This document shows positions 13,520 through 58,498 of a stretch of DNA of 64,000 bases, one piece after another. The notes beneath the pieces were generated by a model. The model was given only the letters and a program-made list of their open reading frames with translations. It was not told the DNA's origin and searched no databases. Position numbers and translations under genes: made by a program. Location: assembly GCF_902713615.1 (NCBI RefSeq), contig NC_052151.1, forward strand, positions 372,001 through 436,000, written 5' to 3'. The DNA comes from Scyliorhinus canicula. Taxonomy: Eukaryota. Numbering within the stretch: the first letter of the stretch is position 1; every line of letters starts with the position of its first letter.

Positions 13520-13872
13520 TATCCCATTTAGCACGGTGGTAGTGCCACACAGCACGATTGAGGGTCTCCACAAGGACTGTGCGGTGGTCACTTCTACCGA
13601 TACTGTCATGGACAGATCCATCTGCAGCAGGCAGGTTGGTGAGGATGAGGTCAAGTATGTTTTTCCCTCTTGTTGGTTCCCTCACCACCTGCTGCAGTCC
13701 CAGTCTAGCAGCTATTGTCCTTTAGGACCCCGGCCAGCTCGGCCTGTGGTGGTACCGAGCCTCTCTTGGTGATGGACATTGAAGTCTCCCACCCAGAGCA
13801 CATTCTGTTCCCTTGCTTCCCTCAGTGCTTCCTCCAAGTGGTGTTCAACATGGAGGAGTAACTGATTCATCA
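13520..13872 (-). mobile_element. CR1-clade APE endonuclease fragment
   Basis: VLWVGDFNVHH...VREPTRGKNILDLILTN...SDH motifs. Copy at ~32118-32470. Confidence 0.8.
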
Positions 13873-14199
13873 GCTGAGTGGGGGGGGGGGGGGTGTGTTG
13901 TGGGGGGGCTGGCACAGGGGTGGGGGGGGGGGGAACTGGCGTGGAAGGGGAGTGGGTAACCAGCATGTTTGACCTTATGCTATGATACTTCATGGGGTGC
14001 GGAGTCAATGTTGGCACAAGGAAGGATTAATAAGGAGGACTTTGCAGGATTCACAGAGCTGGGTTTACTGTTGCTGTTTACCGCTGCCACATTGATCCTG
14101 GGAAATCCGTGCGGCGTCATTCCTTACTGACTTATCTTTCACAGTTTGATACTGCCAGGTGCCTGTAAACCTCTATGGCTCTATGACTAATGTAGTGAG

Positions 14200-15892
14200 T
14201 TACTAGTCTAGTGTATTAGTCTAGTGAATTGCTAGATTAATCTAGTGGATTATCAATCCAGTGGATTACTGGTCTGGTGGATTTGTCTAGTGGATTACCA
14301 GCCCAGGGGATTTCCAGCAAGTGAATTACTGGTCCAGTGGATTACCAGTCAAGTGGATTACCAGCCCCCGGGGATTACTGGTCCAGTGGATTACCAGTCA
14401 AGTGGATTACCAGCCCCCAGGATTACTGGTCCAGTGGACTAACAGTCAAGTGGATTATTCGTCTGGTAGATTACCAGTCAAGTGGATTACTGGTCCAGTG
14501 GATTACCAGTCCAATGGATTACCAGCCTAGGGGATTATCAGTCCAGTGGATTACTAATCCAGTGGATTATCAGTCCAGTCGATTATGGGTCCAGTGGATT
14601 ACCAGTCAATTTGATTACCAATCCAGCGGATTACCAGTCAATTGGATTACTGATCCAGTGGATAACAGTCCAGTGGATTACCAGTTAAGTGGATTACTGG
14701 TCCAGTGGATTACTAGTCCAGTGGATTACTAGTCCAGTGGATTACTAAACCAGTGGATTACTAGTCCAGTGGGATACTCGTAACGTGGAGCTGACTAGGG
14801 GCACAGATACATAGAAGTAGGAGCAGGAGGAGGCCTTCTGGCCCTTCGAGCCTGCTCCACCATTCATCGCCATCATGGCTGATCATCCAACTCAATAGCC
14901 TAATCCTGCTTTCTCCCCATAGCCTTTGATCCCATTCTCCCCAAGTGCTACATCCAGCCGCCTCTTGTTCAAAGTTTTAGCATCAACTACTTCCTGTGGT
15001 AATGAATTCCACAGGCTCACCACTCTTTGTGTGAAGAAATGTCTCCTTATCTCTGTCCGAAATGGTTTACCCAGAATCCTCAGACTGTGACCCCTGGTTC
15101 TGGACACACCCCTCATTGGAAACATCTTCCCTGCATCGACCCTGTCCAGTCCTGTTAGAATTTTATAAGTCTCTATGAGATCCCCCCTCATTCTTCTGAA
15201 CTCCAGCGTGAACAATCCCAACCTCGTCAATCTCTCCTCATATGACAGTCCCACCATCCCAGGAATCAGTCTGGTAAACCTTTGCTGCTCTCCCTCGAGA
15301 GCAAGAACATCCTTCCTCAGAGAAGGAGACCAAAACTGCCGACAATACTCCAGATGTGGCCTCACCAAGGCCCTGTATAATTGCAGCAACACATCCCTGC
15401 TTCTATACTCGAAACTTCTCGCTATGAAGGCCAACATACCATTAGCCGTCTTTACCGCCTGCTACACCTGCATGCTTACCTTCAGCGACTGGTGCACAAG
15501 GACAAGGTCTAGTGGATTCCCAGTCCTGTGGATTACTAGTCCAGTGGGATACTCATAATGTGGATCTGTCCGGTGGATTACTAGTTCTGTGGGTTACTAG
15601 TACAGTTGATTTATCTAGTGGATTACCAGAGTTGCAGATTACTAGTCCAGTGGATTACCAGTTCAGCAGATTATCAACCCAGTGGATTACCGATCTTGTG
15701 GATTATTAGTTCAGTGGATTGCTAGTCTTGTGGATTACTAGATACATGGATTACTAGTCCTGTGGATCTGTCTGGTGGATCACCACTCCAATGGCTTACC
15801 AGTCCAACGTGTTACCAGTCCAACAGGTTACTAGTCCAGTGGATTACCAGTCCAGCGGATTACAAATTCAGTGGATCGCCGAGTGGATTAAA
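14200..15892. repeat. Degenerate 16-bp minisatellite TGGATTAC(T/C)AGTCCAG, interrupted by a CR1 3' fragment
   Basis: Units are present on both sides of 14808-15503. Copy at ~32800-34492. Confidence 0.85.
14808..15503 (-). mobile_element. CR1 LINE 3' end (ORF2 C-terminus + 3'UTR)
   Basis: ORF 14892-15437 LLQLYRALVRPHLEYC.QFWSP...RGHSL...FFTQRVVSLWNSLP. Confidence 0.9.
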
Positions 15893-16654
15893 GTGCCCGG
15901 TGTTTAGTTACAGGGACTGCACTTTCTTCAATAAGGCTGTCTGTCACAGTTGTTACTCTCCCACATCTACACAGGATTAGAAGATACAGTTAGCCCTTCC
16001 ACTATCTCCAATCCCACCTCCGTTAGCAAACCAATCAGGAGCAGGCGACTGATCCACTCTCAGCACAGCTGAACTTCCTGGTAGATCCTGCCCATCCGTG
16101 ACCTCCACTTCCTGTCAGCATCAGTACATACTGATAGAAAATACTCAGTTTTCCATCCTTGCTCTTCACTATTTACATGGTTAAAGATTTTAGATTCTCT
16201 TCAATATTAACAGTCATTCTACTCTCTCATTTTGCAAGTCTTATTTTCCTTTTCACTTCCCCCTCAGCCTGACCTGGTTGTCACTTGACAAACTCACCCG
16301 GTGTACATCGTCTACTCTCTTTATTGTTTATCACATTCTGTATCTCCCTCGTCATCCAGCGTGTCCTGTATTTGGACCCCTAACGTTTGCCCTTCAGCTC
16401 GTGCCTGAAACATCTCATTGATGATCACCCATTGTTTCTGTTACAGTTTGCCATGTCAATCTCTGATTCCATTTCACTCCGCCCAGGAACCCTCTCATCA
16501 CATTAAAATTAACCCTCTTCCAACTTAAAAGATTGACTTTAGATTGTTCCTTGCTCTTCATTACTGATCAAAACATGATAATATGATCACTCTTACCCAC
16601 GTGTTCCCCGCAGACACTTGATACACTTGCTCTTCCCCATTATTCTTCCACATA

Positions 16655-19600
16655 CCAGTGAGGCTAGAAATGGGAAGATAGTACAGCTCAACACCTGATT
16701 AAACAGCTTGTGCAGGAGAGAGGGTTTCCGATTTCTGGACCATTGGGATCTCTTCCAGGGCAGGGGTGACCTGTACAAGAAGGACGGGTTACATCTAAAC
16801 TGGAGGGGCACCAATATCCTGGCTGGGAGGTTGCTAGAGTCACTCGGGAGGGTTTAAACTAGTTTGGCAGGAGGGTAGGAACCAGAGCAAAGGTGAATTA
16901 ACTGAATGGGAACTAGAGAGTAGGGCCTGTAAGACTCAGGAAGTGCAGACAGTGGTTGCTCATCAAAGAGGTTCTGGTAGACTGAAGTGCATTTGTTTCA
17001 ATGTGAGAACAGATAAGGCAGATGAATTGAGAGCTTGGAACTATGATGTTGTTGCCATTTCAGAGACTTGGTTAAGGGAAGGACAGGATTGGCAGCTAAA
17101 CATTCCAGGATTTAGATGTTTCAGGCAGGATAGAGGGGATGTAAAAGGGGTGGAGGATTTACTCCATTGGTTAGGGAGAATATCACAGCTGTACTGCGGG
17201 ATGACACCTTGGAGGGCTCATGCAGCGAGGCAATATGGGTAGAGCTCAGGAACAAGAAGGGGATAATCACATTGTTGGGGGGTTACTATAGACCTCCCAA
17301 TAGCCAGGGGAGATAGAGAAACAGATATGTTGGCAGATATTGGCAATGTGTAAAAGTAACAGGATTGTTGTGATGGGAGACTTCAACTTCCCCAATATTG
17401 ACTGGGACTCACTTAGTGCTGGGGGCTTAGACGGGGCAGAGTTTGTAAGGAGCATCTAGGAGGGCTTCTTAAAACAATATGTAGATAGTCCAACGAGGGA
17501 AGGGGCTGGACTGGAACTGGTATTTGGGAATGAGCCCAGCCAGGTGGTAGAAGTTTCAGCAGGGGAGCATTTCGGGAACAGTGACCACAATTTAGTGAAC
17601 CTTCAGGTACTGATGGATAAAGATAAATGTAGTCCTCAGGTGAAGGTGCTAAATTGGGGGAAGGCTAATTACAACAATATTAGGCGGGAACTGAAGAATG
17701 TAGATTGGGGGGCAGATGTTTGAGGGGAAATCAACATCTGGCACGTGGGAGGCTTTCAAGTGTCAGTTGATAGGACTTCAGGACCGGCACGTTCCTGTAA
17801 GGGTGAAAGATAAGTATGGCATGTTTTGGGAACCTTGGATAACGAGAGATATTGTCGGCCTAGTCAAAAAGAAAAAAGAGCCATTTGTTAGGGCTAGAAG
17901 GCTGGGAACAGACGAAGCCTGTGTGGAATATAAGGAAAGTAGGAGGGTACTTAAGCAAGGAGTCAGGAGGTCTAAAAGGGGTCATAAAAAGTCATTGGCA
18001 AATAGGGTTAAGGAAAATCCCAAGGCTTTTTATACATATATAAAAAGCAAGAGGGTAGCCAGGGAGAGGGTTGATCCAAGCAAGGACAGGGGAGGGAATC
18101 TATGTGTGGAACCAGAGGAAATGGGTGAGGTACTAAAGGAGAACTTTGTGTCAGTATTCACCAAAGAAAAGGACTTGGTGGATGATGAGTCTGGGGAAGG
18201 GAGTATAGATAGTTTGGGTCATGTTGAGATCAAAAAGGAGGAGGTTTTGGGGATCTTGAAAAATATTAAGGTAGATAAGTCCCCAGGGCCTGATGGGATC
18301 TACCCCAGAATACTGAAGGAGGTTAGAGAGGAAATTGCTGAGGCATTGACAGAAATCTTTGGATCCTCACTGTCTTCAGGGGAGGTCCAGAGGGTTGGAG
18401 AATAGCCAATATTGTTCTTTTGTTTGGTGAGCCTTATGTCAAGTGGCAGGGAAGTTATTGGAGAGGATTCTTCGAGACAGGATTTACTCTCACTTGTAAA
18501 TAAGTGGGTGTGGGTGTATTAGCGAGAGGCAGCATGTTATTGTGAAGGGGAGGTCCTGTCTCACAAACTTGATCATGTTTTTTGAGGAAGTGATGAAGAT
18601 GATTGATGAAGGTAGGGCAGTGGATGCCGTCTATACGGACTTCAGTAAGGCCTTTGGCAAGTGAGCTGCCAAGATGGATACAGAACTGGTTCGGTCATAG
18701 AGACAGGGGGTAGCAATGGAAGGGGGCTTTTCTGATTGGAGGGCTGTGACTAGTGGTGTTCGTCAGGGATCAATGCTGGGACCTTTGCTGTTTGTAATAT
18801 ATAGAAATGATTTGGAGGGAAATAATAATAATAATCACTTATTGTCACAAGTAGGCTTCAATGAAGTTACTGTGCAGAGCCCCTAGTCGCCACATTCCGG
18901 CACCTGTTCGGGGAGGCTGGTACGGGAATTGAACCTGCTGCAGCTGGCATTGCTGCATTACAAGCCAGCTGTTTAGCCCACTGTGCTAAACCAGTCCCTA
19001 AAATGTATCTGATTAGTACGTTTGCGGATGACACAAAGGTTGGTGGAATTGCGGATAGCGATGAGGACTGTCAGGATACAGCAGGATTTAGATCGTTTGG
19101 AGACTTGGACGGAGAGATGGCAGATGGAGTTTAATCTGGACAAATGTGAGGTTATCATTTTGGAAGGTCTAATGCAGGTAGGGAATATACAGTGAATGGT
19201 AGAACCCTCAAGAGTCTTGACAGTCAGAGAGATCTAGGTGTACAGGTCCACAGGTCACTGAAAGGGGCAACACAGCTGGAGAAGGTAGTCAAGAAAGCAT
19301 ACGGCATGCTTGCCTTCATTGGCCAGGGCATTGAGTATAAGAATTGGCAAGTCATGTTGCAGCTGTATAGAACCTTAGTTAGGCCACACTTGGAGTATAG
19401 TGTTCAATTCTGGTCGTCACACTACCAGAAGGATGTGGAGGCTTTAGAGAAGGTGCAGAAGAGATTTACCAGGATGTTGCCTAGTATGGAGGGCATTAGC
19501 TATGAGGAGTGGTTGAATAAACTCGGTTTGTTCTCACTGGAACGACGGAGATTGAGGGGCGACCTGATAGAGGTCTACAAAATTATGAGGGGCACAGACA

Positions 19601-19827
19601 GAGTGGATAGTCAGAGGCTTTTCCCCAGGGTAGAGGGGTCAATTACTAGGGGGCATAGGTTTAAGGTGCGAGGGGCAAGGTTTAGAGGGGATGTACGAGG
19701 CAAGTTTTTTACACAGAGGGTAGTGGGTGCCTGGAACTCGCTGCCGGAGGAGGTGGTGGAAGCAGGGACGATAGTGACATTTAAGGGCATCTTGACAAAT
19801 ACATGAATAGGATGGGAATAGAGGGAT
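16655..19827 (+). mobile_element. Degenerate near-full CR1 LINE (ORF1 esterase tail, APE, RT)
   Basis: FRFLDHWDLFQGRGDLYKKDGLHLN (SGNH-like ORF1 end), ISETWL, MGDFNFPNIDW, KSPGPDG, FADDTK, LVRPHLEY. Frameshifts and stops are present. Confidence 0.92.
18822..19000 (-). mobile_element. tRNA-derived SINE with (TTA)n tail nested in the CR1 RT
   Basis: Its reverse complement resembles the 13218 SINE body (GAATGTGGCGACTAGGGG...GTGACAATAAG). It splits the RT between NDL and FADD. Copy at ~37424-37605. Confidence 0.8.
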
Positions 19828-20148
19828 AGAATCAAAGATTTTACAGTGCAGAAGGAGGCCATTTGGCCCATTGTGTCTGACCGACCCTATCTAACCCCAC
19901 ACCTCCATCCTTACCACCTATCCCAGTAACCCCACCTAACCTTTTTGGACACTAAGGGCAATTTATCATGGCCAATCGACCCAACCTGAAAATATTTGAA
20001 CTGTGGAGGAAACCGGAGCACCCGGAGGAAACCCACACACACATGGGGAGGATGTGCAGACTCTGCACTGACAGTGACCCAGGCCGGGAATCGAACCTGG
20101 GACCCTGGAGCTGTGAAGCAACAATGCTAACCACTGTGCTACCTTGCC
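19828..20148 (-). mobile_element. HE1-like V-SINE
   Basis: Same V-domain core as 12613-12952. Copy at ~38436-38756. Confidence 0.8.
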
Positions 20149-20265
20149 CCAGTCAAGGGATATGGTCCCTGGGAGGGGCTTTTAGTTCAGATGGGCAGCA
20201 TGATTGGTGCAGGCACGGAGGTACGAAAGGCCTTTTACTGTGCTTATTGTTCTTTGATCTTTGTT

Positions 20266-23200
20266 CACTGTACCCCAGTGTTATACAGTGACAGACCCTT
20301 CCCACCAGTACTGTGTCCCAGTGATATACAGTGACAGACCCATCCCCACCAGTACTGTACCCCAGTGTTATACAGTGACAGACCCCTCCCCACCAGTACT
20401 GTGCCCCAGTGTTATACAGTGACAGACCCTTCCCACCAGTACTGTACCCCAGTGTTATACAGTGACAGACCCGTCCCCACCAGTACTGTACCCCAGTGTT
20501 ATACAGTGACAGACCTGTCCCCACCAGTACTGTACCCCAGTGTTATACAGTGACAGACACGTCCCCACCAGTACTGTACCCCAATGTTATACAGTGACAG
20601 ACCCGTCCCCACCAGTACTGTACCCCAGTGTTATACAGTGACAGACCCGTCCCCACCAGTACTGTGCCCCAGTGTTATACAGTGACAGACCCTTCCCACC
20701 AGTACTGTACCCCAGTGTTATACAGTGACAGACCCTTCCCACCAGTACTGTACCCCAGTGTTATACACTGACAGACCCGTCCCCACCAGTACTGTACCCC
20801 AGTGTTATACAGTGACAGACCCGTCCCCACCAGTACTGTACCCCAGTGTTATACAGTGACAGACCCGTCCCCACCAGTACTGCACCCCAGTGTTGTTCAG
20901 TGACAGACCTCTCCCCACCAGTACTGTATCCCAGTGTTATACAGTGACAGACCCGTCCCCACCAGTACTGTGCCCCAGTGTTATACAGTGACAGACCCGT
21001 CCCCACCAGTACTGTACCCCAGTGTTATTCAGTGACAGACCCTCCCCACCAGTACTGTACCCCAGTGTTATACAGTGACAGACCCTCCCCACCAGTACTG
21101 TACCCCAGTGTTATACAGTGACAGACCCTCCCCACCAGTACTGTACCCCAGTGTTATACAGTGACAGACCCTCCCCACCAGTACTGTACCCCAGTGTTAT
21201 ACAGTGACAGACCCTTCCCACCAGTACTGTGTCCCAGTGATATACAGTGACAGACCCCTCCCCACCAGTACTGTATCCCAGTGTTATACAGTGACAGACC
21301 CCTCCCCACCAGTACTGTACCCCAGTGTTATACAGTGACAGACCCTCCCCACCAGTACTGTACCCCAGTGTTATACAGTGACAGACCCTTCCCACCAGTA
21401 CTGTGTCCCAGTGATATACAGTGACAGACCCCTCCCCACCAGTACTGTATCCCAGTGTTATACACTGACAGACCCGTCCCCAGCAGTACTGTACCCCAGT
21501 GTTATTCAGTGACAGACCCGTCCCCACCAGTACTGTACCCCAGTGTTATACACTGACAGACCCGTCCCCACCAGTACTGTACACCGGTGTTACACAGTGA
21601 CAGACCCACCCCCACCAGTACTGTACCCCAGTGTTATACAGTGACAGACCTGTCCCCACCAGTACTGTACCCCAGTGTTATACAGTGACAGACCCGTCCC
21701 CACCAGTACTGTACCCCAGTGTTATACAGTGACAGACCCTTCCCACCAGTACTGTGTCCCAGTGATATACAGTGACAGACCCCTCCCCACCAGTACTGTA
21801 CCCCAGTGTTATACAGAGACAGACCCGTCCCCACCAGTACTGTACCCCAGTGTTATTCAGTGACAGACCCGTCCCCACCAGTACTGTACCCCAGTGTTAT
21901 ACAGTGACAGACCCGTCCCCACCAGTACTGTACCCCAGTGTTATACAGTGACAGACCTGTCCCCACCAGTACTGTACCCCGTGTTATACAGTGACAGACC
22001 CGTCCCCACCAGTACTGTACCCCGTGTTATACAGTGACAGACCTGTCCCCACCAGTACTGTACCCCGTGTTATACAGTGACAGACCAGTCCCCACCAGTA
22101 CTGTACCCCGTGTTATACAGTGACAGACCCCTCCCCACCAGTACTGTACCCAGTGTTACACAGTGACAGACCCGTCCCCACCAGTACTGTACCCCAGTGT
22201 TATACAGTGACAGACCCGTCCCCACCAGTACTGTACCCCAGTGTTATACAGTGACAGACCCACCCCCACCAGTACTGTACCCCAGTGTTATACAGTGACA
22301 GACCCACCCCCACCAGTACTGTATCCCAGTGTTATACAGTGACAGACACGTCCCCACCAGTACTGTACCCCAGTGTTATACAGTGACAGACACGTCCCCA
22401 CCAGTACTGTACCCCAGTGTTATACAGTGACAGACCCGTCCCCACCAGTACTGTACCCCAGTGTTATACACTGACAGACCCGTCCCCACCAGTACTGTAC
22501 CCCAGTGTTATACAGTGACAGACCCCTCCCCACCAGTACTGTACACCAGTGTTATACAGTGACAGACCCGTCCCCACCAGTACTGTATCCCAGTGTTATA
22601 CAGTGACAGACCCGTCCCCACCAGTACTGTATCCCAGTGTTATACAGTGACAGACCCTCCCCACCAGTACTGTACCCCAGTGTTATACAGTGACAGACCC
22701 GTCCCCACCAGTACTGTATCCCAGTGTTATACAGTGACAGACCCGTCCCCACCAGTACTGTATCCCAGTGATATACAGTGACAGACCCGTCCCCACCAGT
22801 ACTGTACCCCAGTGTTATACAGTGACAGACCCTCCCCACCAGTACTGTACCCCAGTGTTATACAGTGACAGACCCTTCCCACCAGTACTGTGTCCCAGTG
22901 ATATACAGTGACAGACCCCTCCCCACCAGTACTGTACCCCAGTGTTATACAGAGACAGACCCGTCCCCAGCAGTACTGTACCCCAGTGTTATTCAGTGAC
23001 AGACCCGTCCCCACCAGTACTGTACCCCAGTGTTATACAGTGACAGACCCGTCCCCACCAGTACTGTACCCCAGTGTTATTCAGTGACAGACCCCTCCCC
23101 ACCAGTACTGTACCCCAGTGTTATACAGTGACAGACCCATCCCCACCAGTACTGTACCCCAGTGTTATACAGACCCATCCCCACCAGTACTGTACCCCAG

Positions 23201-24160
23201 TGTTATACAGTGACAGACACGTCCCCACCAGTACTGTACCCCAGTGTTATACAGTGACAGACCCGTCCCCACCAGTACTGTACCCCAGTGTTATACAGTG
23301 ACAGACACGTCCCCACCAGTACTGTACCCCAGTGTTATACAGTGACAGACCCGTCCCCACCAGTACTGTACCCCAGTGTTATACACTGACAGACCCGTCC
23401 CCACCAGTACTGTACCCCAGTGTTATACAGTGACAGACCCCTCCCCACCAGTACTGTACACCAGTGTTATACAGTGACAGACCCGTCCCCACCAGTACTG
23501 TATCCCAGTGTTATACAGTGACAGACCCGTCCCCACCAGTACTGTATCCCAGTGTTATACAGTGACAGACCCGTCCCCACCAGTACTGTATCCCAGTGAT
23601 ATACAGTGACAGACCCGTCCCCACCAGTACTGTACCCCAGTGTTATACAGTGACAGACCCATCCCCACCAGTACTGTACCCCAGTGTTATACAGTGATAG
23701 ACCCGTCCCCACCAGTACTGTACCCCAGTGTTATACAGCGACAGACCCGTCCCCACCAGTACTGTACCCCAGTGTTATACAGTGACAGACCCGTCCCCAC
23801 CAGTACTGTACCCCAGTGTTATACAGTGACAGACCCGTCCCCACCAGTACTGTACCCTAGTGTTATACAGTGACAGACCCGTCCCCACCAGTACTGTACC
23901 CCAGTGTTATACAGTGACAGACCCCTCCCCACCAGTACTGTACCCCAGTGTTATACACTGACAGACCTGTCCCCACCAGTACTGTACCCCAGTGTTATAC
24001 ACTGACAGACATGTCCCCACCAGTACTGTACCCCAGTGTTTTACAGTGATAGACGCGTCCCCACCAGTACTGTACCCCAGTGTTATACACTGACAGACCT
24101 GTCCCCACCAGTACTGTACCCCAGTGTTATACACTGACAGACCCCTCCCCACCAGTACTG
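20266..24160. repeat. 44-bp minisatellite CAGTACTGTACCCCAGTGTTATACAGTGACAGACCCGTCCCCAC
   Basis: About 88 tandem units ending at the N gap. Confidence 0.97.
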
Positions 24161-24660
24161 NNNNNNNNNNNNNNNNNNNNNNNNNNNNNNNNNNNNNNNN
24201 NNNNNNNNNNNNNNNNNNNNNNNNNNNNNNNNNNNNNNNNNNNNNNNNNNNNNNNNNNNNNNNNNNNNNNNNNNNNNNNNNNNNNNNNNNNNNNNNNNNN
24301 NNNNNNNNNNNNNNNNNNNNNNNNNNNNNNNNNNNNNNNNNNNNNNNNNNNNNNNNNNNNNNNNNNNNNNNNNNNNNNNNNNNNNNNNNNNNNNNNNNNN
24401 NNNNNNNNNNNNNNNNNNNNNNNNNNNNNNNNNNNNNNNNNNNNNNNNNNNNNNNNNNNNNNNNNNNNNNNNNNNNNNNNNNNNNNNNNNNNNNNNNNNN
24501 NNNNNNNNNNNNNNNNNNNNNNNNNNNNNNNNNNNNNNNNNNNNNNNNNNNNNNNNNNNNNNNNNNNNNNNNNNNNNNNNNNNNNNNNNNNNNNNNNNNN
24601 NNNNNNNNNNNNNNNNNNNNNNNNNNNNNNNNNNNNNNNNNNNNNNNNNNNNNNNNNNNN
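24161..24660. other. Assembly gap (500 N)
   Basis: Run of N. Confidence 1.
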
Positions 24661-26290
24661 CTGCATGGGTGGTAAATGTGTGTGTGCAGATGCATGTGCG
24701 GTACATGCGTGTATGGTAAATGTGTGGGGACCATGTGTGTGGACCATGTGTGTGGTACATGTGTGTGTGGTACATGTGTGTGTGTGGTTAATGTGTGCGC
24801 AGTGTGTGCGGTACAAGCATGTGTGGTACATGTGTGTATGGTACATGCCAATGGTACATGTGTGTGTGGTACATGTGTGTGGTACATGCATGCGTGGTAC
24901 ATGCGTGTGTGGTTCATGTGTGTGGTATGTGTGTGTTTTACATTGTGTGTGTGTGGTACATCTGTGTGCGGTACATGTGTGTGGTATATTTGTGTGTGGT
25001 ACATGCATGTGTGGTACATGTGTGTGTGGTTCATGTGTGTGATACATGCGTGTGTGGTACATGTATATGATACATATGTGTGGTACATGCGTGCATGTTA
25101 CATGATGTGCGGTACATGTGTATGTGGTACATGTGTGTGTGGTACATGCATGTGCGGTATGTGTGTGCAGTACATGTGTGTATGCTATATGCCTGTGCGG
25201 TACATGTGTATGTGATACATGTGTGTGTGGTACATGCATGTGAGATACATGCATGTGAGGTACCCATGTGTGCGGTACATGCATGTTCAGTACTTGCATG
25301 TACGGTATATTCATGTGCGGTTAATACGTGTGTGGTACATACGTGCATGTTACATGTGTGTGTGATTCATGCATGTGGTACCAAGCCTCCAGTCCCAGAC
25401 ATTGAGCCCTGAACAACCGATTACTACAGGCAGTGAGGAGAAAGGAGAAGGAGCTGTTGTTTCTCTGTGTTTACAGCGAGGCAGAGCTCAAAATCAGAGA
25501 CATAATCAGACTGATCGGGCAGGAAACATTAGTGACAGGAGGGAGGTTTACAAAGGGACAGTGGATCACTGCTGTTATTGATCCACATTAATGACCCAGA
25601 CTTGGTACAGGGAACAATTGTACAATTTGCAGATGGCACAAAGATCGTGTGTACGGTGAACTATGACGAGGATAGTGATAGACTGGTAGAGAATATAAGA
25701 GGCAGAGCAGAAACAAATGCTTTTGAAGATGGTGTGGTTGCAGTGACAGAGATTCCCCAGCAGAGGGAACCCACGCTCCATCGTCCAGCTCAAAGACAAG
25801 AATGAGTGACAGGAATTGGGAGATGTTCCCTCTGGAACTGATCAATAATTTTAGCACCAGGGACAACCTTCCGACTCTAATATCTTCATTAAACATCACC
25901 ACTCATGCCTAAGCCAAGTCAGAATTCCGGATCCCGAACTGCGTTTCCTCTTCCTGATCCCAATGCAGAATCCTTAAACTTGATCAATGTTTGGAATTCC
26001 TAATCCTGATTGCTGCTTTTGATCACGATCCAGGGATTCCTGCACTTCCTGACACATCCAGGATTGTTCCTGATTCCTATCCAGGATTTCTTTCCCGGAG
26101 CAGTATCTGGAATTCCTGCTCTTGATCCCTATCCGGGATTCCTGATCCCAAATCCAATGTGGGATTCATATACCCAAAGCAGCATCTGGGGTTCCTGTTC
26201 CTGAACCCAGTCTGTACCGTCAACACAAAGCATTGCAGTAACTCACCAAGGCTCCTTAGACAGCACCTTCCTTTACCGGGGTCGACCTGC

Positions 26291-41263: not shown

Positions 41264-41279
41264 ATGAATCATGTGGATG
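41264..41279 (+). other. 3' part of a candidate upstream exon of LBH-like (ATG AAT CAT GTG GAT G | GTGAGT donor)
   Basis: Consensus donor ATG|GTGAGT at 41279/41280 in the only unique island between two arrays. Phase 1 matches the frame of the downstream exon. The 5' boundary is unknown. Confidence 0.5.
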
Positions 41280-41342
41280 GTGAGTGTGTTGCGTAGAAAG
41301 CGCAGCCTCTCCATCTCTGAGAGTTAAAATCGCTGTGCACTG

Positions 41343-42340
41343 AGGAGGTGACTGTTTGTGTTTTCTCCCAGGCCTGTGTGCTGAGGTGACTGTGTGTTTG
41401 TGTTTACTCCCAGGCCTGTGTGCTGAGGTGACTGTGTGTTTGTGTTTACTCCCAGGCCTGTGTGCTGAGGTGACTGTGTGTTTGTGTTTACTCCCAGGCC
41501 TGTGTGCTGAGGTGACTGTGTGTTTGTGTTTTCTCCCAGGCCTGTGTGCTGAGGTGACTGTGTGTTTGTGTTTACTCCCAGGCCTGTGTGCTGAGGTGAC
41601 TGTGTGTTTGTGTTTACTCCCAGGCCTGTGTGCTGAGGTGACTGTGTGTTTGTGTTTACTCCCAGGCCTGTGTGCTGAGGTGACTGTGTGTTTGTGTTTA
41701 CTCCCAGGCCTGTGTGCTGAGGTGACTGTGTGTTTGTGTTTACTCCCAGGCCTGTGTGCTGAGGTGACTGTGTGTTTGTGTTTACTCCCAGGCCTGTGTG
41801 CTGAGGTGACTGGTTGTGTTTACTCCCAGGCCTGTGTGCTGAGGTGACTGTGTGTTTGTGTTTACTCCCAGGCCTGTGTGCTGAGGTGACTGTGTGTTTG
41901 TGTTTACTCCCAGGCCTGTGTGCTGAGGTGACTGTGTGTTTGTGTTTACTCCCAGGCCTGTGTGCTGAGGTGACTGTGTGTTTGTGTTTACTCCCAGGCC
42001 TGTGTGCTGAGGTGACTGTGTGTTTGTGTTTACTCCCAGGCCTGTGTGCTGAGGTGACTGTGTGTTTGTGTTTACTCCCAGGCCTGTGTGCTGAGGTGAC
42101 TGTGTGTTTGTGTTTACTCCCAGGCCTGTGTGCTGAGGTGACTGTGTGTTTGTGTTTACTCCCAGGCCTGTGTGCTGAGGTGACTGTGTGTTTGTGTTTA
42201 CTCCCAGGCCTGTGTGCTGAGGTGACTGTGTGTTTGTGTTTACTCCCAGGCCTGTGTGCTGAGGTGACTGTGTGTTTGTGTTTACTCCCAGGCCTGTGTG
42301 CTGAGGTGACTGTGTGTTTGTGTTTACTCCCAGGCCTGTG
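41343..42340. repeat. 42-bp tandem array GCCTGTGTGCTGAGGTGACTGTGTGTTTGTGTTTACTCCCAG (24 acceptor copies)
   Basis: First CCCAG ends at 41371 and the last at 42333. The 962-bp spacing equals 22x42 plus one 38-bp unit near 41810. Confidence 0.97.
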
Positions 42341-42353
42341 AGCTGCTGACGCT

Positions 42354-42428
42354 ATGACTGGGGTGGTGAATTCTGGCTCCATTGATCAGATGGAACTCAG
42401 TTCCCGCAAGGACACGCTGTGTTTCCAG
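42354..42428 (+). CDS. lbh: LBH-family protein, coding exon A (MTGVVNSGSIDQMELSSRKDTLCFQ)
   Basis: Resembles the LBH segment MTEVMMNTQPMEEIGLSPRKDGLSYQ (from memory). Acceptor CCCAG at 42333 and phase-0 donor CAG|GTTAGT at 42428/42429. Confidence 0.85.
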
Positions 42429-42577
42429 GTTAGTCCGTTCAGTCAGGGAATGGCTGTTAAAGCTCGAGAACATCTTCAATAACAATCATTTCTTATCGGT
42501 CAGCAGCCAGATTGGGCAATGTCAGTTTGGCTTTCAAAAGCTGAATAAAGGTGAGAGGGGTCCCCAAATTGTGAGAT

Positions 42578-45500
42578 TCCAGATCCCCAGCCAGTGATCC
42601 CAGTGCCAGATCCCCAGCCAGTGATCTCAGGGCCAGATCCCCATCCAGTGATCCCAGTGCCAGATCCCCATCCAGTGATCTCAGGGCCAGATCCCCATCC
42701 AGTGATCCCAGTGCCAGATCCATAGCCAGTGATCTCAGTGCCAGATCCCCAGCCAGTGATCTCAGTGCCAGATCCCCAGCCCGTGACCCAGCTCCAGATC
42801 CCCAGCCAGTGATCTCAGTGCCAGGTCCCCAGCCAGTGATCTCAGTGCCAGGTCCCCAGCCAGTGATCTCAGCCCCAGATCCTCAGCCAGTGATCTCAGC
42901 CCCAGATCCTCAGCCAGTGATCTCAGCCCCAGATCCCCAGCCAGTGATCTCTGTGCCAGATCCCCAGTCAGTGATCTCAGTGCCAGATCCCCAGCCCGTG
43001 ACCCAGCTCCAGATCCCCAGCAGGTGATCTCAGTGCCAGATCCCCAGTCAGTGATCTCAGTGCCAGATCCAAAGCCAGTGATCTCAGTGTCAGTTCCCCA
43101 GCTAGTGATCCCAATGCCAGATCCCCAGCCAGTGATCTCTGTGCCAGATCCCCAGTCAGTGATCTCAGTGCCAGATCCCCAGCACGTGACCCAGCTCCAG
43201 ATTCTCAGCCAGTGATCCCAATGCCAGATCCCCAGCCAGTGATCTCAGTACCAGACCCCAGCCAGTGATCTCAGTCCCAGATCCCCCGCCAGCGATCCCA
43301 GCGCCAGATCCCCAGCCAGTGATTTTAGCACCAGATCCACAGCCAGTGATCCCAGTGCCAGATCCCCAGCCAGTGACCCAGCTCCAGATCCCCAGGCAGT
43401 GTTCCCAGTGCCAGATCCCCAGCCAGTGACCCAGCTCCAGATCCACAGCCAGTGATCCCAGTGCCAGGTCCCCAGCCAGTGATCTCAGGGCCAGATCCCC
43501 ATCCAGTGATCCCAGTGCCAGATCCCCAGCCAGCGATCCCAGTGCCAGGTCCCCAGCCAGTGATCTCAGGGCCAGATCCCCATCCAGTGATCCCAGTGCC
43601 AGATCCCCAGCCAGCGATCCCAGCGCTAGATCCCCAGCCAGTGATCTCAGTGCCAGATCCCCAGTCAGTGATCTCAGTACCAGATCCCCAGGTAGTGATC
43701 CCAATGCCAGATCCCCAGCCAGTGATCTCAGTGCCAGATCCCCAGCCCGTGACCCAGCTCCAGATTCCCAGCCAGTGATCTCAGTGTCAGATCCCCAGTC
43801 AGTGATCTCAGTACCAGATCCCCAGCCAGTGATCTCAGTCCCAGATACCCAGCCAGTGATCTCAGTCCCAGATCACCAGCCAGTGTTCCCAGTGCCAGAT
43901 CCCCAGCCAGTGATCTTAGCACCAGATCCACAGCCAGTGATCCCAGTGCCAGATCCCCAGCCAGTGACCCAGCTCCAGATCCCCAGCCAGTGATCCCCGT
44001 GCCAGATCCCAAGCCAGTGATCTCAGTGCCAGATCCCCAGCCAGTGTTCCCAGTGCCAGATCCCCAGCCAGTGATCTCTGTGCCAGATTCCCAGTCAGTG
44101 ACCTCAGTGCCAGATCCCCAGCCAGTGATCTCAGCCCCAGATCCTCAGCCAGTGATCCCAATGCCAGATCCCCAGCCAGTGATCTCTGTGCCAAATCCCC
44201 AGTCAGTGATGTCAGTGCCAGATCCCCAGCCAGTGATCTCAGTCCCAGATCACCAGCCAGTGTTCCCAGTGCCAGATCCCCAGCCAGCGATCCCAGCGCC
44301 AGATCCCCAGCCAGTGATCTTAGCACCAGATCCCCAGCCAGTGACCCAGCTCCAGATCCCCAGCCAGTGATCCCCGTGCCAGATCCCCAGCCAGTGATCT
44401 CAGGGCCAGATCCCCATCCAGTGATCCCAGTGCCAGATCCCCAGCCAGCGATCCCAGCGCTAGATCCCCAGCCAGTGATCTCAGTGCCAGATCCCCAGCC
44501 AGTGATCTCAGCCCCAGATCCTCAGCCAGTGATCCCAATGCCAGATCCCCAGCCAGTGATCCCAGTGCCAGATCCCCAGCCAGTGATCCCAGAGCCTGAT
44601 CCCCAGCCAGTGATCTCAGTCCCAGATCCTCCTCCAGTGATCTCAGCCACAGATCCCCAGCCAGTGATCCCAGAGCCTGATCCCCAGCCAGTAATTCCAG
44701 CACCAGAACCATAGTCAGTAGCCCCAGAGCCTGATCCACAGCGAGTGATCTCATTGCCAGACCCCCAGCCAGCGATCCCAGCGCCAGATCCCCAGCCAGT
44801 GATCTCAGCCCCAGATCCACAGCCAGTGATCTCAGCCCCAGATCCCCAGCCAGTGATTCCAGCCCCAGATCCTCAGTCAATGATGCCAGTCCCAGATCCC
44901 CAGCCAGTGATCCCAGCACCAGATCCCCAGCCAGTGGTCTCAGTCCCAGATCCCCAGCCAGTGATCTCAGCACCAGATCCACAGCCAGTGATCTCAGCCC
45001 CAGATCCCCAGCCAGTGATTCCAGCCCCAGATCCTCAGTCAATGATGCCAGTCCCAGATCTCCAGCCAGTGATCCCAGCACCAGATCCCCAGCCAGTGGT
45101 CTCAGTCCCAGATCCCCAGCCAGTGATCTCAGTGCCAGATCCACAGCCAGTGATCTCAGTCCCAGATCCCCAGCCAGTGATCTCAGTCCCAGATCCCCAG
45201 CCAGTGATCTCAGCGCCAGATCCACAGCCAGTGATCTCAGTCCCAGATCCTCAGTCAATGATGCCAGTCCCAGATCCCCAGCCAGTGATCTCAGTCCCAG
45301 ATCCCCAGCCAGTGATTCCAGCACCAGAATCACAGCCAGTGATCCTAGTCCTGAACCTCCAGACAGTGATCCTAGCTAGATCCACAGCCAGCGATCTTAC
45401 CACCAGATGTAGAGCCAGTGATCCCAGCCCCAGATCCCTAGCCAGAGATTCCAGAGCCTGATCCACAGCATGTAATCTCTGTGTCAGATCCACAGCCAGT

Positions 45501-47098
45501 GATCCCAATGCTAGATTCTCAGCCAGTGATTTCAGCACCAGATCCTCCTCCAGTGATCTCAGCCACAGATCCCCAGCCAGTGATCTCAGTGCCAGATCCC
45601 CAGCCAGTGATCTCAGTCCCAGATCCCCAGCCAGTGATCTCAGCGCCAGATCCACAGCCAGTGATCTCAGTCCCAGATCCCCAGCCAGCGATCCCAGCGC
45701 CAGATCCCCAGCCAGTGATCTTAGCACCAGATCCCCAGCCAGTGACCCAGCTCCAGATCCCCAGCCAGTGATCCCCGTGCCAGATCCCCATCCAGTGATA
45801 TCAGGGCCAGATCCCCATCCAGTGATCCCAGTGCCAGATCCCCAGCCAGCGATCCCAGCGCTAGATCCCCAGCCAGTGATCTCAGTGCCAGATCCCCAGC
45901 CAGTGATCTCAGCCCCAGATCCTCAGCCAGTGATCCCAATGCCAGATCCCCAGCCAGTGATCCCTGTGCCAGATCCCCAGCCAGTGATCCCAGAGCCTGA
46001 GCCCCAGCCAGTGATCTCAGTCCCAGATCCTCCTCCAGTGATCTCAGCCACAGATCCCCAGCCAGTGATCCCAGAGCCTGATCCCCAGCCAGTGATCTCA
46101 GTCCCAGATCCCCAGCCAGTGATCTCAGCACCAGATCCACAGCCAGTGATCTCAGCCCCAGATCCCCAGCCAGTGATTCCAGCCCCAGATCCTCAGTCAA
46201 TGATGCCAGTCCCAGATCCCCAGCCAGTGATCCCAGCACCAGATCCCCAGCCAGTGGTCTCAGTCCCAGATCCCCAGCCAGTGATCTCAGCGCCAGATCC
46301 ACAGCCAGTGATCTCAGTCCCAGATCCCCAGCCAGTGATCTCAGTCCCAGATCCCCAGCCAGTGATCTCAGCGCCAGATCCACAGCCAGTGATCTCAGTC
46401 CCAGATCCTCAGTCAATGATGCCAGTCCCAGATCCCCAGCCAGTGATCTCAGTCCCAGATCCCCAGCCAGTGATTCCAGCACCAGAATCACAGCCAGTGA
46501 TCCTAGTCCTGAACCTCCAGACAGTGATCCTAGCTAGATCCACAGCCAGCGATCTTACCACCAGATGTAGAGCCAGTGATCCCAGCCCCAGATCCCTAGC
46601 CAGAGATTCCAGAGCCTGATCCACAGCATGTAATCTCTGTGTCAGATCCACAGCCAGTGATCCCAGTGCTAGATTCTCAGACAGTGATTTCAGCACCAGA
46701 TCCTCCTCCAGTGATCTCAGCCACAGATCCCCAGCCAGTGATCTCAGTGCCAGATCCCCAGCCAGTGATCTCAGTCCCAGATCCCCAGCCAGTGATCCCA
46801 GCGCCAGATCCACAGCCAGTGATCTCAGTCTCAGATCCCCAGCCAGTGATCCCAGTGCCAGATACCCAGCCCGTGATCTCAGTGCCAGATCCACAGCCAG
46901 TGATCTCAGTCCCAGATCCCCAGCCAGTGATCCCAGCGCCAGATCCCCAGCCAGTGATCCCAGTGCCAGATCCCCAGCCAGTGATCCCAGTGCCAGATCC
47001 CCAGCCAGTGTACCCAGTCCCAAATCCTCAGCCACTGATCCCAGTGCCAGATCCCTATCTGGTGATTCCTGCTCCAGATCCCAATCCAGTGAATCCAG
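42578..47098. repeat. 27-bp intronic minisatellite CCAGATCCCCAGCCAGTGATCTCAGTG with higher-order structure
   Basis: About 165 units filling most of LBH intron 42429-47281. Confidence 0.96.
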
Positions 47099-47281
47099 TT
47101 GCTTAGTGAAGCCCGGGATTGGGTTATAGATGGATGCAGGTCTTGGTGGACTGTGGGAGGGACTGCGGGTGGTGGGGTAGTAGTGCTTATTCAAACAGTG
47201 ATGATGAGAAGGGTCTCCAGTGTTGGAAGGTGCCCAGTCTCCCTGACCTGTCCCTCACTATTATCTTCTTTTCTTGCCCAG

Positions 47282-47476
47282 ATATTTCCTGATCCCTCCG
47301 ACTTTGACCATTTCTGTCGACTGAAAGATCGTCTCCCATCCATTGTGGTGGAACCAAGTGAGGGAGAGGTGGAGAGTGGGGAACTGCGATGGCCACCAGA
47401 GGAGATGGTGGTCACTGAGGAAGTAAGTGCGGAAGCCAGCAAAGAGAGTGAGACGCTGGTCAGTATGGAGCAATAA
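47282..47476 (+). CDS. lbh: LBH-family protein, terminal coding exon (IFPDPSDFDHFCRLKDRLPSIVVEPSEGEVESGELRWPPEE...MEQ*)
   Basis: Signature LBH domain RLPSIVVEP.EGEVESGELRWPPEE. Polypyrimidine acceptor ending CCCAG at 47281 and TAA at 47474-47476. The spliced product is 89 aa; it may be an lbh-like paralog rather than the LBH ortholog. Confidence 0.95.
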   Translation: MFPDPSDFDHFCRLKDRLPSIVVEPSEGEVESGELRWPPEEMVVTEEVSAEASKESETLVSMEQ

Positions 47477-47493
47477 CTGAACCTCTCACGAAC

Positions 47494-47499
47494 AATAAA
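47494..47499 (+). promoter_or_regulatory. Candidate polyadenylation signal AATAAA
   Basis: 18 nt after the stop codon. Alternative AATAAA sites at ~47973 and ~48024. Confidence 0.3.
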
Positions 47500-48089
47500 C
47501 TGAGTGCCTCTGGAGAAGGTGAGAGGATGAAGATCTTCCCGCTGGAAGCCAAACCAGGGGGAGGACTACCCTTGAGGCCTGGCCTGGATAGGCTTGGCCT
47601 GGAATTTCTGGACATTTCCAGAGACCTCAGATTGTGTGGGCTTGCTGTAAGTGTGCTGTCCTGTTCGGCGGATAGACGCTTCTATCCTTTACAAAGCCTC
47701 AGAACTATTATTTTTTTCCTCAGTGTTTTGTTTACTGAACTGTGATATCTGCAATGAGATTTGAGGGGGGGTTGTGCCAAGGCCTGTCACTGTATATTTG
47801 CAGTTGGCACCAATCCCATCAACCACATGCAAAGTGTTAGAACCCACACGGGTCTGACGGGGTCGGAATGATTAACTACCCTGTGCACCTTCCAGCTCCC
47901 TCGGTAAGGGAATGGGGACCTTTACCAATGCCTGACTGTGCATCAATAGAGTTGGCCAGTCAGGCAGTGAGTAATAAAGGCCCAGTGGGGAGCTACTGGA
48001 GATGTATATAATAGTAGTTGTAAAATAAAGTAGATTTTGCTTCACAAACTTGGTGTGGACTCTTTGTGGCCTTTACAAAATAATACTAC

Positions 48090-49304: not shown

Positions 49305-49339
<35 letters not shown>

Positions 49340-49686: not shown

Positions 49687-49720
49687 GAGGGCATTTAAGA
49701 GTCAACCACATTGCTGTGAG

Positions 49721-50819
49721 ACTCCTACCTCAGACTCCTATTCATTGACTACAGCTCCGCCTTCAACACCATAATCCCAACTAAGCTCATATCAAAGCTC
49801 CAAAACCTAGGACTAGGCTCTCCACTCTGCAACTGGATCCTCGATTTTCTGACCCACAGACCACAATCAGTAAGAATCAACAACACCTCCTCCACAATAG
49901 TCCTCAATACCGGTGCCCTGCAAGGCTGTGTACTTAGCCCCCTACTCTACTCCCTGTACACACACGACTGCGTGGCAAAACTTGGTTCCAACTCCATGTA
50001 CAAGTTTGCTGACGATACGACCATAATGGGCCGGATCTCGAATAACGATGAGTCAGAATACAGGAGGGAGATAGAGAACCTAGTGGAGTGGTGTAGCGAA
50101 AATAATCTCTCCATCAATGCCAGCAAAACTAAAGAGCTGGTCATCGACTTCAGGAAGCAAAGTACTGTACACACCCCTGTCAGCATCAACGGAGCCGAGG
50201 TGGAGATGGTTAGCAGTTTCAAATTCCTAGGGGTGCACATCACCAACAATCTGTCCTGGTCCACCCACGTCGACGCTATCACCAAGAAAGCACAACAGCG
50301 CCTATACTTCCTCAGGAAACTAAGGAAATTCGGTATGTCCACATTAACCCTTACCAACTTTTACAGATGCACTATGGAGAGCATCCTATCGGGCTGCATC
50401 ACAGCCTGGTATGGCAACTGCTCGGCCCAGGACCGCAAGGAACTTCAGAGAGTCGTGAATATCGCCCAATCATCACACGAACCCAGCTTATTCACTCTTC
50501 CAACTTCTTCCATCGGGCAGGAGATACAGAAGTCTGAGAACACGCACGAACAGACTCAAAAACAGCTTCTTCCCCACTGTCACCAGACTCCTAAATGACC
50601 CTCTTATTGACTGACCTCATTAACACTACACCCTGTATGCTTCATCCGTGCCGGTGCTTATGTAGTTACATTTTGTATATCTTGTGTTTCCCTATTATGT
50701 ATTTTCTTTTTATTCCCTTTTCTTCCCATGTACTGAATGATCTGTTGAGCTGCTCGCAGAAAAATATTTTTCACTGTACCTCGGTACACGTGACAATAAA
50801 CAAAATCCATCCAATCAAA
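49721..50819 (+). mobile_element. Rex1/Babar-clade LINE RT and 3' end
   Basis: [69 protein letters not shown] and an (ATCCA)n-type tail. Confidence 0.88.
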
Positions 50820-57998: not shown

Positions 57999-58498
57999 NN
58001 NNNNNNNNNNNNNNNNNNNNNNNNNNNNNNNNNNNNNNNNNNNNNNNNNNNNNNNNNNNNNNNNNNNNNNNNNNNNNNNNNNNNNNNNNNNNNNNNNNNN
58101 NNNNNNNNNNNNNNNNNNNNNNNNNNNNNNNNNNNNNNNNNNNNNNNNNNNNNNNNNNNNNNNNNNNNNNNNNNNNNNNNNNNNNNNNNNNNNNNNNNNN
58201 NNNNNNNNNNNNNNNNNNNNNNNNNNNNNNNNNNNNNNNNNNNNNNNNNNNNNNNNNNNNNNNNNNNNNNNNNNNNNNNNNNNNNNNNNNNNNNNNNNNN
58301 NNNNNNNNNNNNNNNNNNNNNNNNNNNNNNNNNNNNNNNNNNNNNNNNNNNNNNNNNNNNNNNNNNNNNNNNNNNNNNNNNNNNNNNNNNNNNNNNNNNN
58401 NNNNNNNNNNNNNNNNNNNNNNNNNNNNNNNNNNNNNNNNNNNNNNNNNNNNNNNNNNNNNNNNNNNNNNNNNNNNNNNNNNNNNNNNNNNNNNNNNN
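57999..58498. other. Assembly gap (500 N)
   Basis: Run of N. Confidence 1.

What the first reader, a model, noticed from the sequence alone, without database searches (positions are those of the whole stretch)
41343..42340. LBH splice acceptor amplified into a 24-copy tandem array
Seen: the 42-bp unit is the intron/exon junction of the LBH exon. It has a branch-point-like GTGAC, a T/G-rich tract, CCCAG and the first exon bases GCCTGTG, and only the last copy (AG at 42332-42333) continues into LBH. With one unit, the intron from donor 41280 would be 92 nt. Each unit also contains a donor-like GAG|GTGACT 14 nt after its AG, so it could act as a 14-nt micro-exon. Inference: the spliceosome faces 24 near-identical acceptors, so VNTR copy number could set 5'UTR length, uORF length and LBH output.
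Basis: partly seen in the sequence, partly recalled or inferred. Interest (0 to 1): 0.75.

Follow-up and report, generated by a model that had tools for sequence, protein, structure and literature searches.

The report
Splice-acceptor minisatellite before catshark LBH exon
In the small-spotted catshark, a 42-base piece that spans the probable end of an intron and the first 12 bases of the first coding exon of the LBH gene is repeated 24 times in a row; this is a clean example of a known kind of exon-boundary repeat, and nothing here shows that the extra copies are used.

Summary
A 42-bp tandem array (23.7 copies, 98% matches) gives 24 CCCAG|GCCTGTG sites 42 nt apart. Of its 23 interior units, 21 are identical. 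The array runs 12 nt into the first coding exon of Scyliorhinus canicula LBH, annotated 'LBH-like' (89 aa, Pfam Lbh).

It fits the exon-boundary minisatellites known as 'mirages' in amphioxus (Adh3, and a globin gene with an acceptor-side array) and known on the donor side in human F7, IFI6 and CBS. This scan has already noted four others in the same genome: ERGIC3, LAMTOR1, FPGT and an MHC class I gene.

The functional claim is untested: that copy number sets 5'UTR length, uORF length and LBH output. No read or contig from four runs lay on the exon stretch. The read tool turns away long repeats, so I did not send it the array. No orthologous shark DNA was served.

My best reading (0.55) is a recently expanded, tolerated repeat in a 5'UTR intron, with only the AG next to the exon used. 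Only that AG is followed by a full-size exon with a good donor. In the documented precedents the genuine site is always used; only IFI6 and CBS add pseudo-sites, the two nearest it.

The upstream exon ending at 41279 has modest support: a donor matching 8 of 9 consensus positions, with 0.06 expected by chance. There is no CpG island or other promoter evidence there. This is a new member of a known kind, of low to moderate interest.

The parts
38875..41187 (+). 44-bp minisatellite, 52.7 copies, upstream of the island. It is unrelated to the 42-bp unit but related to the 27-bp array downstream.
   Evidence: TRF. Unit comparisons: 44 vs 27, 1 of 2000 shuffles reached the score; 42 vs 44 not significant.
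41264..41279 (+). Its 5' limit is unknown; candidates are an acceptor-like CCAG|C at 41201 and a TATA-like TATTAA at 41233. Inferred, not shown.
   Evidence: Sequence. It is the only strong donor in the 165-nt island. Donors of this quality occur at 0.38 per kb in non-array sequence, so 0.06 are expected in the island. No CpG island: o/e 0.12-0.18.
41280..41331 (+). Donor GTGAGT and the unique left part of the putative 5'UTR intron.
   Evidence: 8 of 9 matches to MAG|GTRAGT.
41332..41371 (+). Diverged leftmost copy ('unit 0'): GCTGTGCACTGAGGAG + GTGACTGTTTGTGTTTTCTCCCAG, holding the first AG. Its pyrimidine tract is the best of the copies scored (13 of 16).
41372..42333 (+). 23 units of 42 bp (one of 38 bp). 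Each is 14 exon-like nt (GCCTGTGTGCTGAG) followed by 28 intron-like nt (GTGAC..TTTACTCCCAG). 21 of the 23 are identical.
42334..42428 (+). First coding exon of LBH: 20 nt of 5'UTR, whose first 12 nt belong to the periodic tract; an in-frame TGA at 42339-42341; ATG at 42354; 25 codons; donor CAG|GTTAGT at 42429.
42429..47281 (+). Intron between the two coding exons. 92% of it is a 27-bp minisatellite (42579-47055, 166 copies).
47282..47476 (+). Last coding exon of LBH (IFPDP...VSMEQ plus stop). The 3'UTR follows, with AATAAA at 47494, 47973 and 48024.
   Evidence: (Pfam Lbh, 3.5e-17). 55-95% of the sampled 3'UTR words are held by 18 runs from 6 studies.

Best explanation
This is an exon-boundary minisatellite of the 'mirage' type. 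The repeated piece is 42 bp: the last 28 nt of the intron that precedes the first coding exon of catshark LBH (branch-like GTGAC, T/G-rich tract, CCCAG), the first 12 nt of that exon, and 2 junction bases. It was multiplied by slippage or unequal exchange. Two short imperfect direct repeats bracket the piece, GCTGTGCACTGAG on the left and GCCTGTGAGCTG on the right, and may have seeded the process. The interior copies are almost identical and both edge copies are diverged, which is the usual sign of recent expansion or continuing homogenisation. The array lies in non-coding sequence: a 5'UTR intron whose donor is at 41280 or further upstream. It contains no ATG, so extra copies cost little. In pre-mRNA the AG next to the exon (42333) is most likely the one used. 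Only it is followed by a 95-nt exon with a good donor. Each interior AG is followed by just 14 nt, a weaker donor that lacks the +5 G, and then only 28 nt to the next AG, too short for an intron. Shown: the anatomy, the gene identity, the edge divergence and the frame arithmetic. Inferred: that 42333 is a used acceptor, where the upstream exon lies, that interior copies are silent, and how the array arose.
For: Array anatomy and near-perfect homogeneity. Overlap with the exon is 12 nt only. LBH identity and CDS limits 42354-47476, with an in-frame TGA at 42339. All five shark LBH proteins are 89 aa and begin at this exon, so anything upstream is non-coding. Splice-site quality: candidate donor 8 of 9 consensus positions, unit donor 7 of 9, exon donor 8 of 9; unit tract 11 of 16 pyrimidines against 14 of 16 for the last exon's acceptor. 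A donor this good is unlikely by chance in the 165-nt island (0.06 expected), and acceptor-like sites of this quality occur at only 0.74 per kb. Precedent: amphioxus mirages include an acceptor-side array in BflGb6, and RT-PCR showed regular splicing (PMC3087553). In the human donor-side arrays the genuine site is always used; IFI6 and CBS add only the two nearest pseudo-sites (PMC1557585). 42% of this window is tandem array, so the region is prone to such expansions.
Against: There is no RNA evidence at all. laid nothing on 42280-42578 in four runs, three of which hold 81-88% of the sampled 3'UTR words. The tool warns that its filter can drop contigs, and the raw-read run is no test. The first AG (41371) has the best tract (13 of 16) and lies only 92 nt from the candidate donor, so intron definition could favour it. 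There is no CpG island or clear promoter near 41.2 kb, so the upstream exon is uncertain. Pyrimidine-rich tracts ending in AG also occur in other minisatellite units of this window, so the array might have supplied the acceptor rather than copied it. No orthologous DNA could be read to tell these apart.
Confidence: 0.55

Rival explanations
1. One reading: several of the 24 acceptors, or the 14-nt pieces between an AG and the next GAG|GT, are used at appreciable levels. Copy number would then tune 5'UTR length, uORF length and LBH translation.
For: All interior copies match the last one from the branch-like motif through 7 nt past the AG. The first copy has the best pyrimidine tract and would leave a 92-nt intron. 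The frame entered from ATG 41264 is open through the unit, adding 14 codons per retained unit. IFI6 and CBS show that the pseudo-sites nearest the genuine site can be used (PMC1557585).
Against: No transcript evidence. Retaining many units would put a long uORF and up to about 1 kb of extra leader before a conserved developmental gene. The 38-nt unit 11 breaks the open frame, so uORF length would not scale with copy number. A 14-nt exon with a 7-of-9 donor and 28 nt to the next AG is a poor splicing unit. In the precedents the genuine site is always used, with at most the two nearest pseudo-sites added.
Confidence: 0.12
2. The LBH exon at 42334-42428 is really the first exon, or is reached from a start inside or just after the array. 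The array would then be a promoter-proximal or 5'-flank minisatellite, never a splicing substrate, and its CCCAG only resembles an acceptor. It could act, if at all, as a cluster of repeated protein-binding sites; each unit carries the forkhead core TGTTTAC.
For: Shark LBH proteins all start in this exon and lack the N-terminal stretch that tetrapod LBH proteins of 99-112 aa carry. No RNA support for any upstream exon. A TATA-like TATTAA at 41233 would leave an upstream exon of only about 15-20 nt. TGTTTAC occurs 22 times in the array against 6 in the rest of the window, both strands. Pyrimidine-rich tracts ending in AG occur in other minisatellite units of the window.
Against: The region is CpG-poor and the unit has no TATA box. 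By my own knowledge, not tested here, the homologous exon is internal in other vertebrate LBH genes. A donor matching 8 of 9 positions lies at the right distance upstream, with 0.06 expected by chance. The forkhead core is one 7-mer among hundreds of possible motifs, so it is only a lead.
Confidence: 0.2
3. The copy number, or the array itself, is an assembly artefact from mis-assembled long reads in a repeat-dense, gap-flanked region.
For: The window has two 500-N gaps and an 18.5-kb near-duplicate placed straight after one of them. Perfectly homogeneous arrays are hard to size.
Against: A 1-kb array lies well within long-read length. The array has private variants at fixed places (units 4 and 11) and clean unique flanks on both sides. 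Arrays of the same kind recur elsewhere in this genome.
Confidence: 0.05

Closest known systems
Amphioxus 'mirages': minisatellite-like tandem duplications of exon-intron boundaries (Adh3; globin genes BflGb6 and BflGb9)
   Same: The tandem unit spans a splice junction. BflGb6 repeats the 3' end of an intron plus the 5' part of the next exon, which is the acceptor side, as here. Interior copies are homogenised and edge copies diverged. The copies carry AG/GT signals, yet RT-PCR shows regular splicing (PMC3087553).
   Different: The amphioxus globin units are 150-160 bp, with 3-6 copies at 81-100% identity, and include coding sequence. Here the unit is 42 bp, there are 24 copies with 21 of 23 interior units identical, only 12 nt of 5'UTR are included, and the animal is a vertebrate. 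Splicing was not measured here.
Human splice-donor minisatellites: F7 IVS7 (37 bp, 5-9 copies), IFI6/6-16 (25 pseudo-sites), CBS IVS13, LMNB2, PDGF
   Same: The array's edge unit spans an exon-intron boundary, so the authentic site is followed by identical pseudo-sites. The arrays vary in copy number. Only the authentic site is used, or at most its two nearest neighbours as well (PMC1557585).
   Different: Those arrays repeat the 5' splice site and lie downstream of the exon. This one repeats the 3' splice-site region (branch-like motif, tract and AG) and lies upstream of the exon. The silent copies would therefore be met before the genuine one during transcription.
Other exon-boundary arrays noted by this scan in the same catshark genome (ERGIC3 acceptor x9 or more; LAMTOR1 donor x136; FPGT donor x270; MHC class I donor x37)
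   Same: Same genome and same design: exon edge plus splice signal copied head to tail. ERGIC3 is also on the acceptor side. These are AI notes that I did not check.
   Different: LBH's array touches only the 5'UTR, so misuse would not break the protein. It has more acceptor copies than the ERGIC3 array.
NAGNAG and other tandem acceptors
   Same: Neighbouring AGs compete for one exon.
   Different: Those are two AGs 3 nt apart that share one branch point and tract. Here each AG has its own branch-like motif and tract, 42 nt apart, 24 times over.

Membership tests
Exon-boundary minisatellite ('mirage') | Head-to-tail array with a minisatellite-size unit (about 10-160 bp) | tested here: met
   Period 42, 23.7 copies, 98% matches; 24 sites in register.
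Exon-boundary minisatellite ('mirage') | The periodic tract runs across a real exon-intron junction, so the unit holds exon bases plus the splice signal | tested here: inconclusive
   The tract ends at 42345, 12 nt inside the sequence that follows AG 42333 and 9 nt before the annotated ATG. That AG 42333 is a used acceptor rests on consensus, on the in-frame stop and on the gene structure in other vertebrates. No RNA was laid.
Exon-boundary minisatellite ('mirage') | The genuine site is the copy at the exon-side edge of the array | tested here: met
   Only the 24th AG continues into the LBH leader and ATG; the other 23 continue into GCCTGTGTGCTGAG|GTGACT.
Exon-boundary minisatellite ('mirage') | Interior copies homogenised, edge copies diverged | tested here: met
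   21 of 23 interior units are identical. The left copy at 41332-41371 and the right 12-nt copy both differ from the interior consensus.
Exon-boundary minisatellite ('mirage') | Copy number varies between alleles or individuals | not tested
   The read tool was used once, beside the array, because it turns away long repeats. No second haplotype of this stretch is in the window.
LBH gene (Pfam PF15317) | Lbh domain and full-length identity to an annotated LBH protein | tested here: met
   Pfam Lbh E 3.5e-17 on 47282-47473. 100% identity to the 89-aa 'LBH-like' protein of Scyliorhinus canicula, and 70-95% to four other shark LBH proteins. The CDS span of 5123 nt equals 42354-47476.
VNTR that regulates through alternative splice-site choice | Transcripts that use different repeat copies as splice sites, in proportions that follow copy number | not testable with these tools
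   Nothing was laid in four runs on 42280-42578.

The most novel reading that the evidence does not exclude
The catshark genome produces minisatellites at splice junctions far more often than chance allows. The scan has now noted at least five: LBH, ERGIC3, LAMTOR1, FPGT and an MHC class I gene. That would point to a mechanistic link between splice-signal sequence, or co-transcriptional events at exon edges, and the birth of arrays. At LBH, the 24 acceptors, or the 22 repeated TGTTTAC sites, would then act as a copy-number-dependent dial on leader length, uORFs or transcription of a developmental regulator.
Probability: 0.08. Interest if true: 0.7.

Novelty: new member of a known kind. Interest (0 to 1): 0.3.

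Why it matters
Arrays of identical splice sites are natural experiments on how the spliceosome picks one site among equals. The donor-side cases (F7, IFI6) have been exploited in this way. Acceptor-side arrays are documented far less often, and one with 24 nearly identical acceptors, each with its own branch-like motif and tract, would make a good test bed. It could pit exon definition against first-come-first-served choice of the 3' splice site. Because it touches only a 5'UTR, variants would be viable and probably differ between individuals. As it stands the array is most likely a tolerated by-product of a very minisatellite-rich region. Its recurrence in this genome may be more interesting than this one locus.

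Tried and rejected
1. RNA evidence. I looked for runs with the 3'UTR (47477-48060), avoiding the conserved coding part. This gave 18 holders, 14 of them guessed to be RNA. I then laid X1, X2, X3 (contigs, three studies) and X23 (raw reads) on 42280-42578, which is the last unit plus the exon. Nothing was laid in any run. The tool says its filter can drop contigs; an LBH mRNA contig also carries the coding exon that is strongly conserved with mammals, so it may have been filtered out. This is no test, not absence.

2. Orthologous loci. Scyliorhinus torazame, Mustelus asterias and Carcharodon carcharias are on record, but no DNA is served ('file too large'). The S. canicula record also gave no DNA. 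No Logan-derived shark LBH protein appeared, so no cDNA contig could be fetched.

3. A coding upstream exon like the tetrapod N-terminus: no such motif in six frames of the window.

4. Descent of the 42-bp unit from the flanking 44-bp or 27-bp units: not significant. Homology between the unit and the exon beyond 12 nt: not significant.

5. Copies of the island or of the unit elsewhere in the window: none.

6. Rfam on the whole window: no match at gathering score.

7. Pfam on four upstream ORFs: nothing.

8. The joined exon-to-exon mRNA or protein model was not typed or searched. The exons were searched separately by reference, and the full protein came from the database (P0001). The uORF frames across the putative joint were read by hand.

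9. Mammalian hits were not fetched or compared. The N runs at 24161-24660 and 57999-58498 were left as they are.

Full report
**What is there**

Positions 41353-42345 hold a 42-bp tandem array of 23.7 copies with 98% matches and no indels. A 31-nt core of the unit occurs 23 times in the window, all inside this array, against none in 100 shuffles.

In register there are 24 CCCAG|GCCTGTG sites. The G of each AG lies at 41371 through 42333. The spacing is 42 nt everywhere except one 38-nt unit at 41792-41829. Of the 23 interior units, 21 are letter-for-letter identical.

Each interior AG is followed after 14 nt by GAG|GTGACT. The branch-like GTGAC puts its A 24 nt before the next AG. The last AG runs into GCCTGTGAGCTGCTGACGCT and then ATG at 42354.

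**The gene**

- 42354-42428 translates to MTGVVNSGSIDQMELSSRKDTLCFQ and ends at a CAG|GTTAGT donor.
- 47282-47476 encodes IFPDP...VSMEQ and matches Pfam Lbh at 3.5e-17.
- The two pieces together equal the 89-aa NCBI protein 'LBH-like' of Scyliorhinus canicula, so the window is small-spotted catshark. That protein's CDS span of 5123 nt equals 42354-47476.
- A TGA at 42339-42341 is in frame with the ATG, so everything upstream is leader.
- Four other shark LBH proteins are also 89 aa and start at the same methionine.
- I searched the exons separately by reference.

**Anatomy of the array edges**

The unit shares 12 nt with the exon (GCCTGTG[T/A]GCTG) and nothing significant beyond that.

On the left, about 41332-41371, lies a diverged copy: GCTGTGCACTGAGGAG followed by GTGACTGTTTGTGTTTTCTCCCAG. 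Collapsed to one copy, the locus would therefore read: a short imperfect direct repeat, 28 nt of intron end, then the repeat again at the exon start. That is a plausible seed for slippage, though this step is inference.

Identical interior units with diverged edges are the usual picture of a recently expanded or still homogenising minisatellite.

The unit is not related to the 44-bp array upstream (38875-41187) or the 27-bp array downstream (42579-47055). Those two arrays are related to each other. Tandem arrays make up 42% of the non-N window.

**Is it a splicing substrate?**

This rests on two unverified points.

First, is AG 42333 a used acceptor? In favour:
- It has a YAG|G with 11 of 16 pyrimidines in the tract. 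Sites this good occur at 0.74 per kb in non-array sequence.
- It lies 20 nt before the start codon.
- By my own knowledge, not tested here, the homologous exon is internal in other vertebrates.

Second, does an upstream exon end at 41279? In favour:
- ATG|GTGAGT matches 8 of 9 consensus positions.
- It is the only strong donor in the 165-nt unique island, where 0.06 such donors are expected by chance.

Against:
- The region is CpG-poor, with o/e 0.12-0.18.
- The only TATA-like element (41233) would leave an exon of some 15-20 nt.
- The alternative 5' edge, an acceptor-like site at 41201, would need yet another exon upstream.

**Attempts at direct evidence**

Eighteen runs from six studies hold 55-95% of the sampled 3'UTR words, and 14 of them are guessed to be RNA. 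I laid three of these plus one raw-read RNA run on 42280-42578, the last unit plus the exon, chosen because the read tool turns away long repeats. Nothing was laid.

The tool warns that its filter can drop contigs. An LBH mRNA contig carries a coding exon that is strongly conserved with mammals, so it may have been filtered out. I treat this as no test.

**Most likely working**

I read this as a tolerated exon-boundary minisatellite inside a 5'UTR intron, with only the exon-side AG used (0.55). The reasons:
- Only that AG is followed by a 95-nt exon with an 8-of-9 donor.
- The interior AGs are followed by 14 nt, a 7-of-9 donor without the +5 G, and just 28 nt to the next AG. That is too short for an intron and too small for exon definition.
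- Using early AGs with the rest retained would place up to 1 kb of leader and a long uORF ahead of a conserved regulator. The frame entered from ATG 41264 is open along the unit.

Against this reading, the first AG has the best tract (13 of 16) and would make a neat 92-nt intron. Use of the first copy, followed by re-splicing from the unit donor, cannot be excluded.

**Comparison with what is known**

Tandem repeats that span an exon-intron boundary were named 'mirages' in amphioxus Adh3. They also occur in amphioxus globin genes, including an acceptor-side array in BflGb6, and RT-PCR showed regular splicing there (PMC3087553).

In humans the donor-side cases are F7 IVS7, IFI6 (6-16), CBS, LMNB2 and PDGF. 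In each the authentic site is used, and IFI6 and CBS add only the two nearest pseudo-sites (PMC1557585).

This scan has already noted arrays of the same design elsewhere in this catshark genome: ERGIC3 (acceptor side), and LAMTOR1, FPGT and an MHC class I gene (donor side). Those are unchecked notes, but they show that the LBH array is not a one-off.

**Verdict**

The structural reading is supported on the condition that 42333 is a real acceptor. The regulatory inference is untested, and precedent does not favour it. This is a new member of a known kind. It stands out for being on the acceptor side, for its 24 almost identical copies, and for lying in a vertebrate developmental gene. Interest 0.3.

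Noticed in passing
window 6195-24160 and 24662-41187; gap 24161-24660: An 18.5-kb segment, including the 44-bp, 30-bp, 16-bp and 15-bp arrays, is repeated straight after a 500-N gap. The unique parts are 97.3-98.2% identical. It is either a recent tandem segmental duplication or two haplotypes assembled in series, so the LBH upstream region may be half as long as drawn.
   Followed up: partly
window 38875-41187 and 42579-47055: The 44-bp and 27-bp minisatellites that bracket the LBH 5' island are related to each other (1 of 2000 shuffles reached the alignment score). The 1.4-kb island with the 42-bp array and the exon therefore sits between two branches of one satellite family.
   Followed up: partly
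whole window: 42% of the non-N sequence is tandem array, in more than 20 arrays with periods of 15-173 bp. Several units are pyrimidine-rich tracts ending in AG, for example the 31-bp unit at 1-3630 with CCCTGCAG. Acceptor-like motifs are therefore not rare in this genome's minisatellites.
   Followed up: partly
window 41372-42333: Each standard unit carries TGTTTAC, the forkhead-factor core: 22 copies in the array against 6 in the rest of the window on both strands. The diverged left copy and unit 4 have TGTTTTC instead. This is one 7-mer among many possible motifs, so it is only a lead.
   Followed up: no
Scyliorhinus torazame record GCA_003427355.1 (protein P0002): The orthologous 89-aa LBH protein (95% identical over the last coding exon) is recorded with a CDS range of 270 nt, meaning no intron between the two coding exons. 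The range is 5123 nt here, 3804 nt in Mustelus and 1527 nt in Carcharodon. It may be a retrocopy, a model built on a collapsed assembly, or a quirk of the record. No DNA was served.
   Followed up: no
window 47477-48060 vs 42280-42578: Runs X1-X3 hold 81-88% of the sampled 3'UTR words, yet no contig of theirs was laid on the first coding exon. The likely cause is the tool's filter for human-like contigs. An LBH transcript form without this exon is not excluded.
   Followed up: no
window 35340-35700 (+) and 49690-50100 (+): Both stretches look like LINE-type retrotransposon coding remnants, endonuclease or reverse-transcriptase-like, by eye from the translations. The annotated 643-aa minus-strand gene that starts at 35255 begins in this transposon-rich sequence and may be a weak model.
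   Followed up: no
window 49308-49338: A long run of about 30 C residues lies about 1.8 kb downstream of the LBH stop codon.
   Followed up: no
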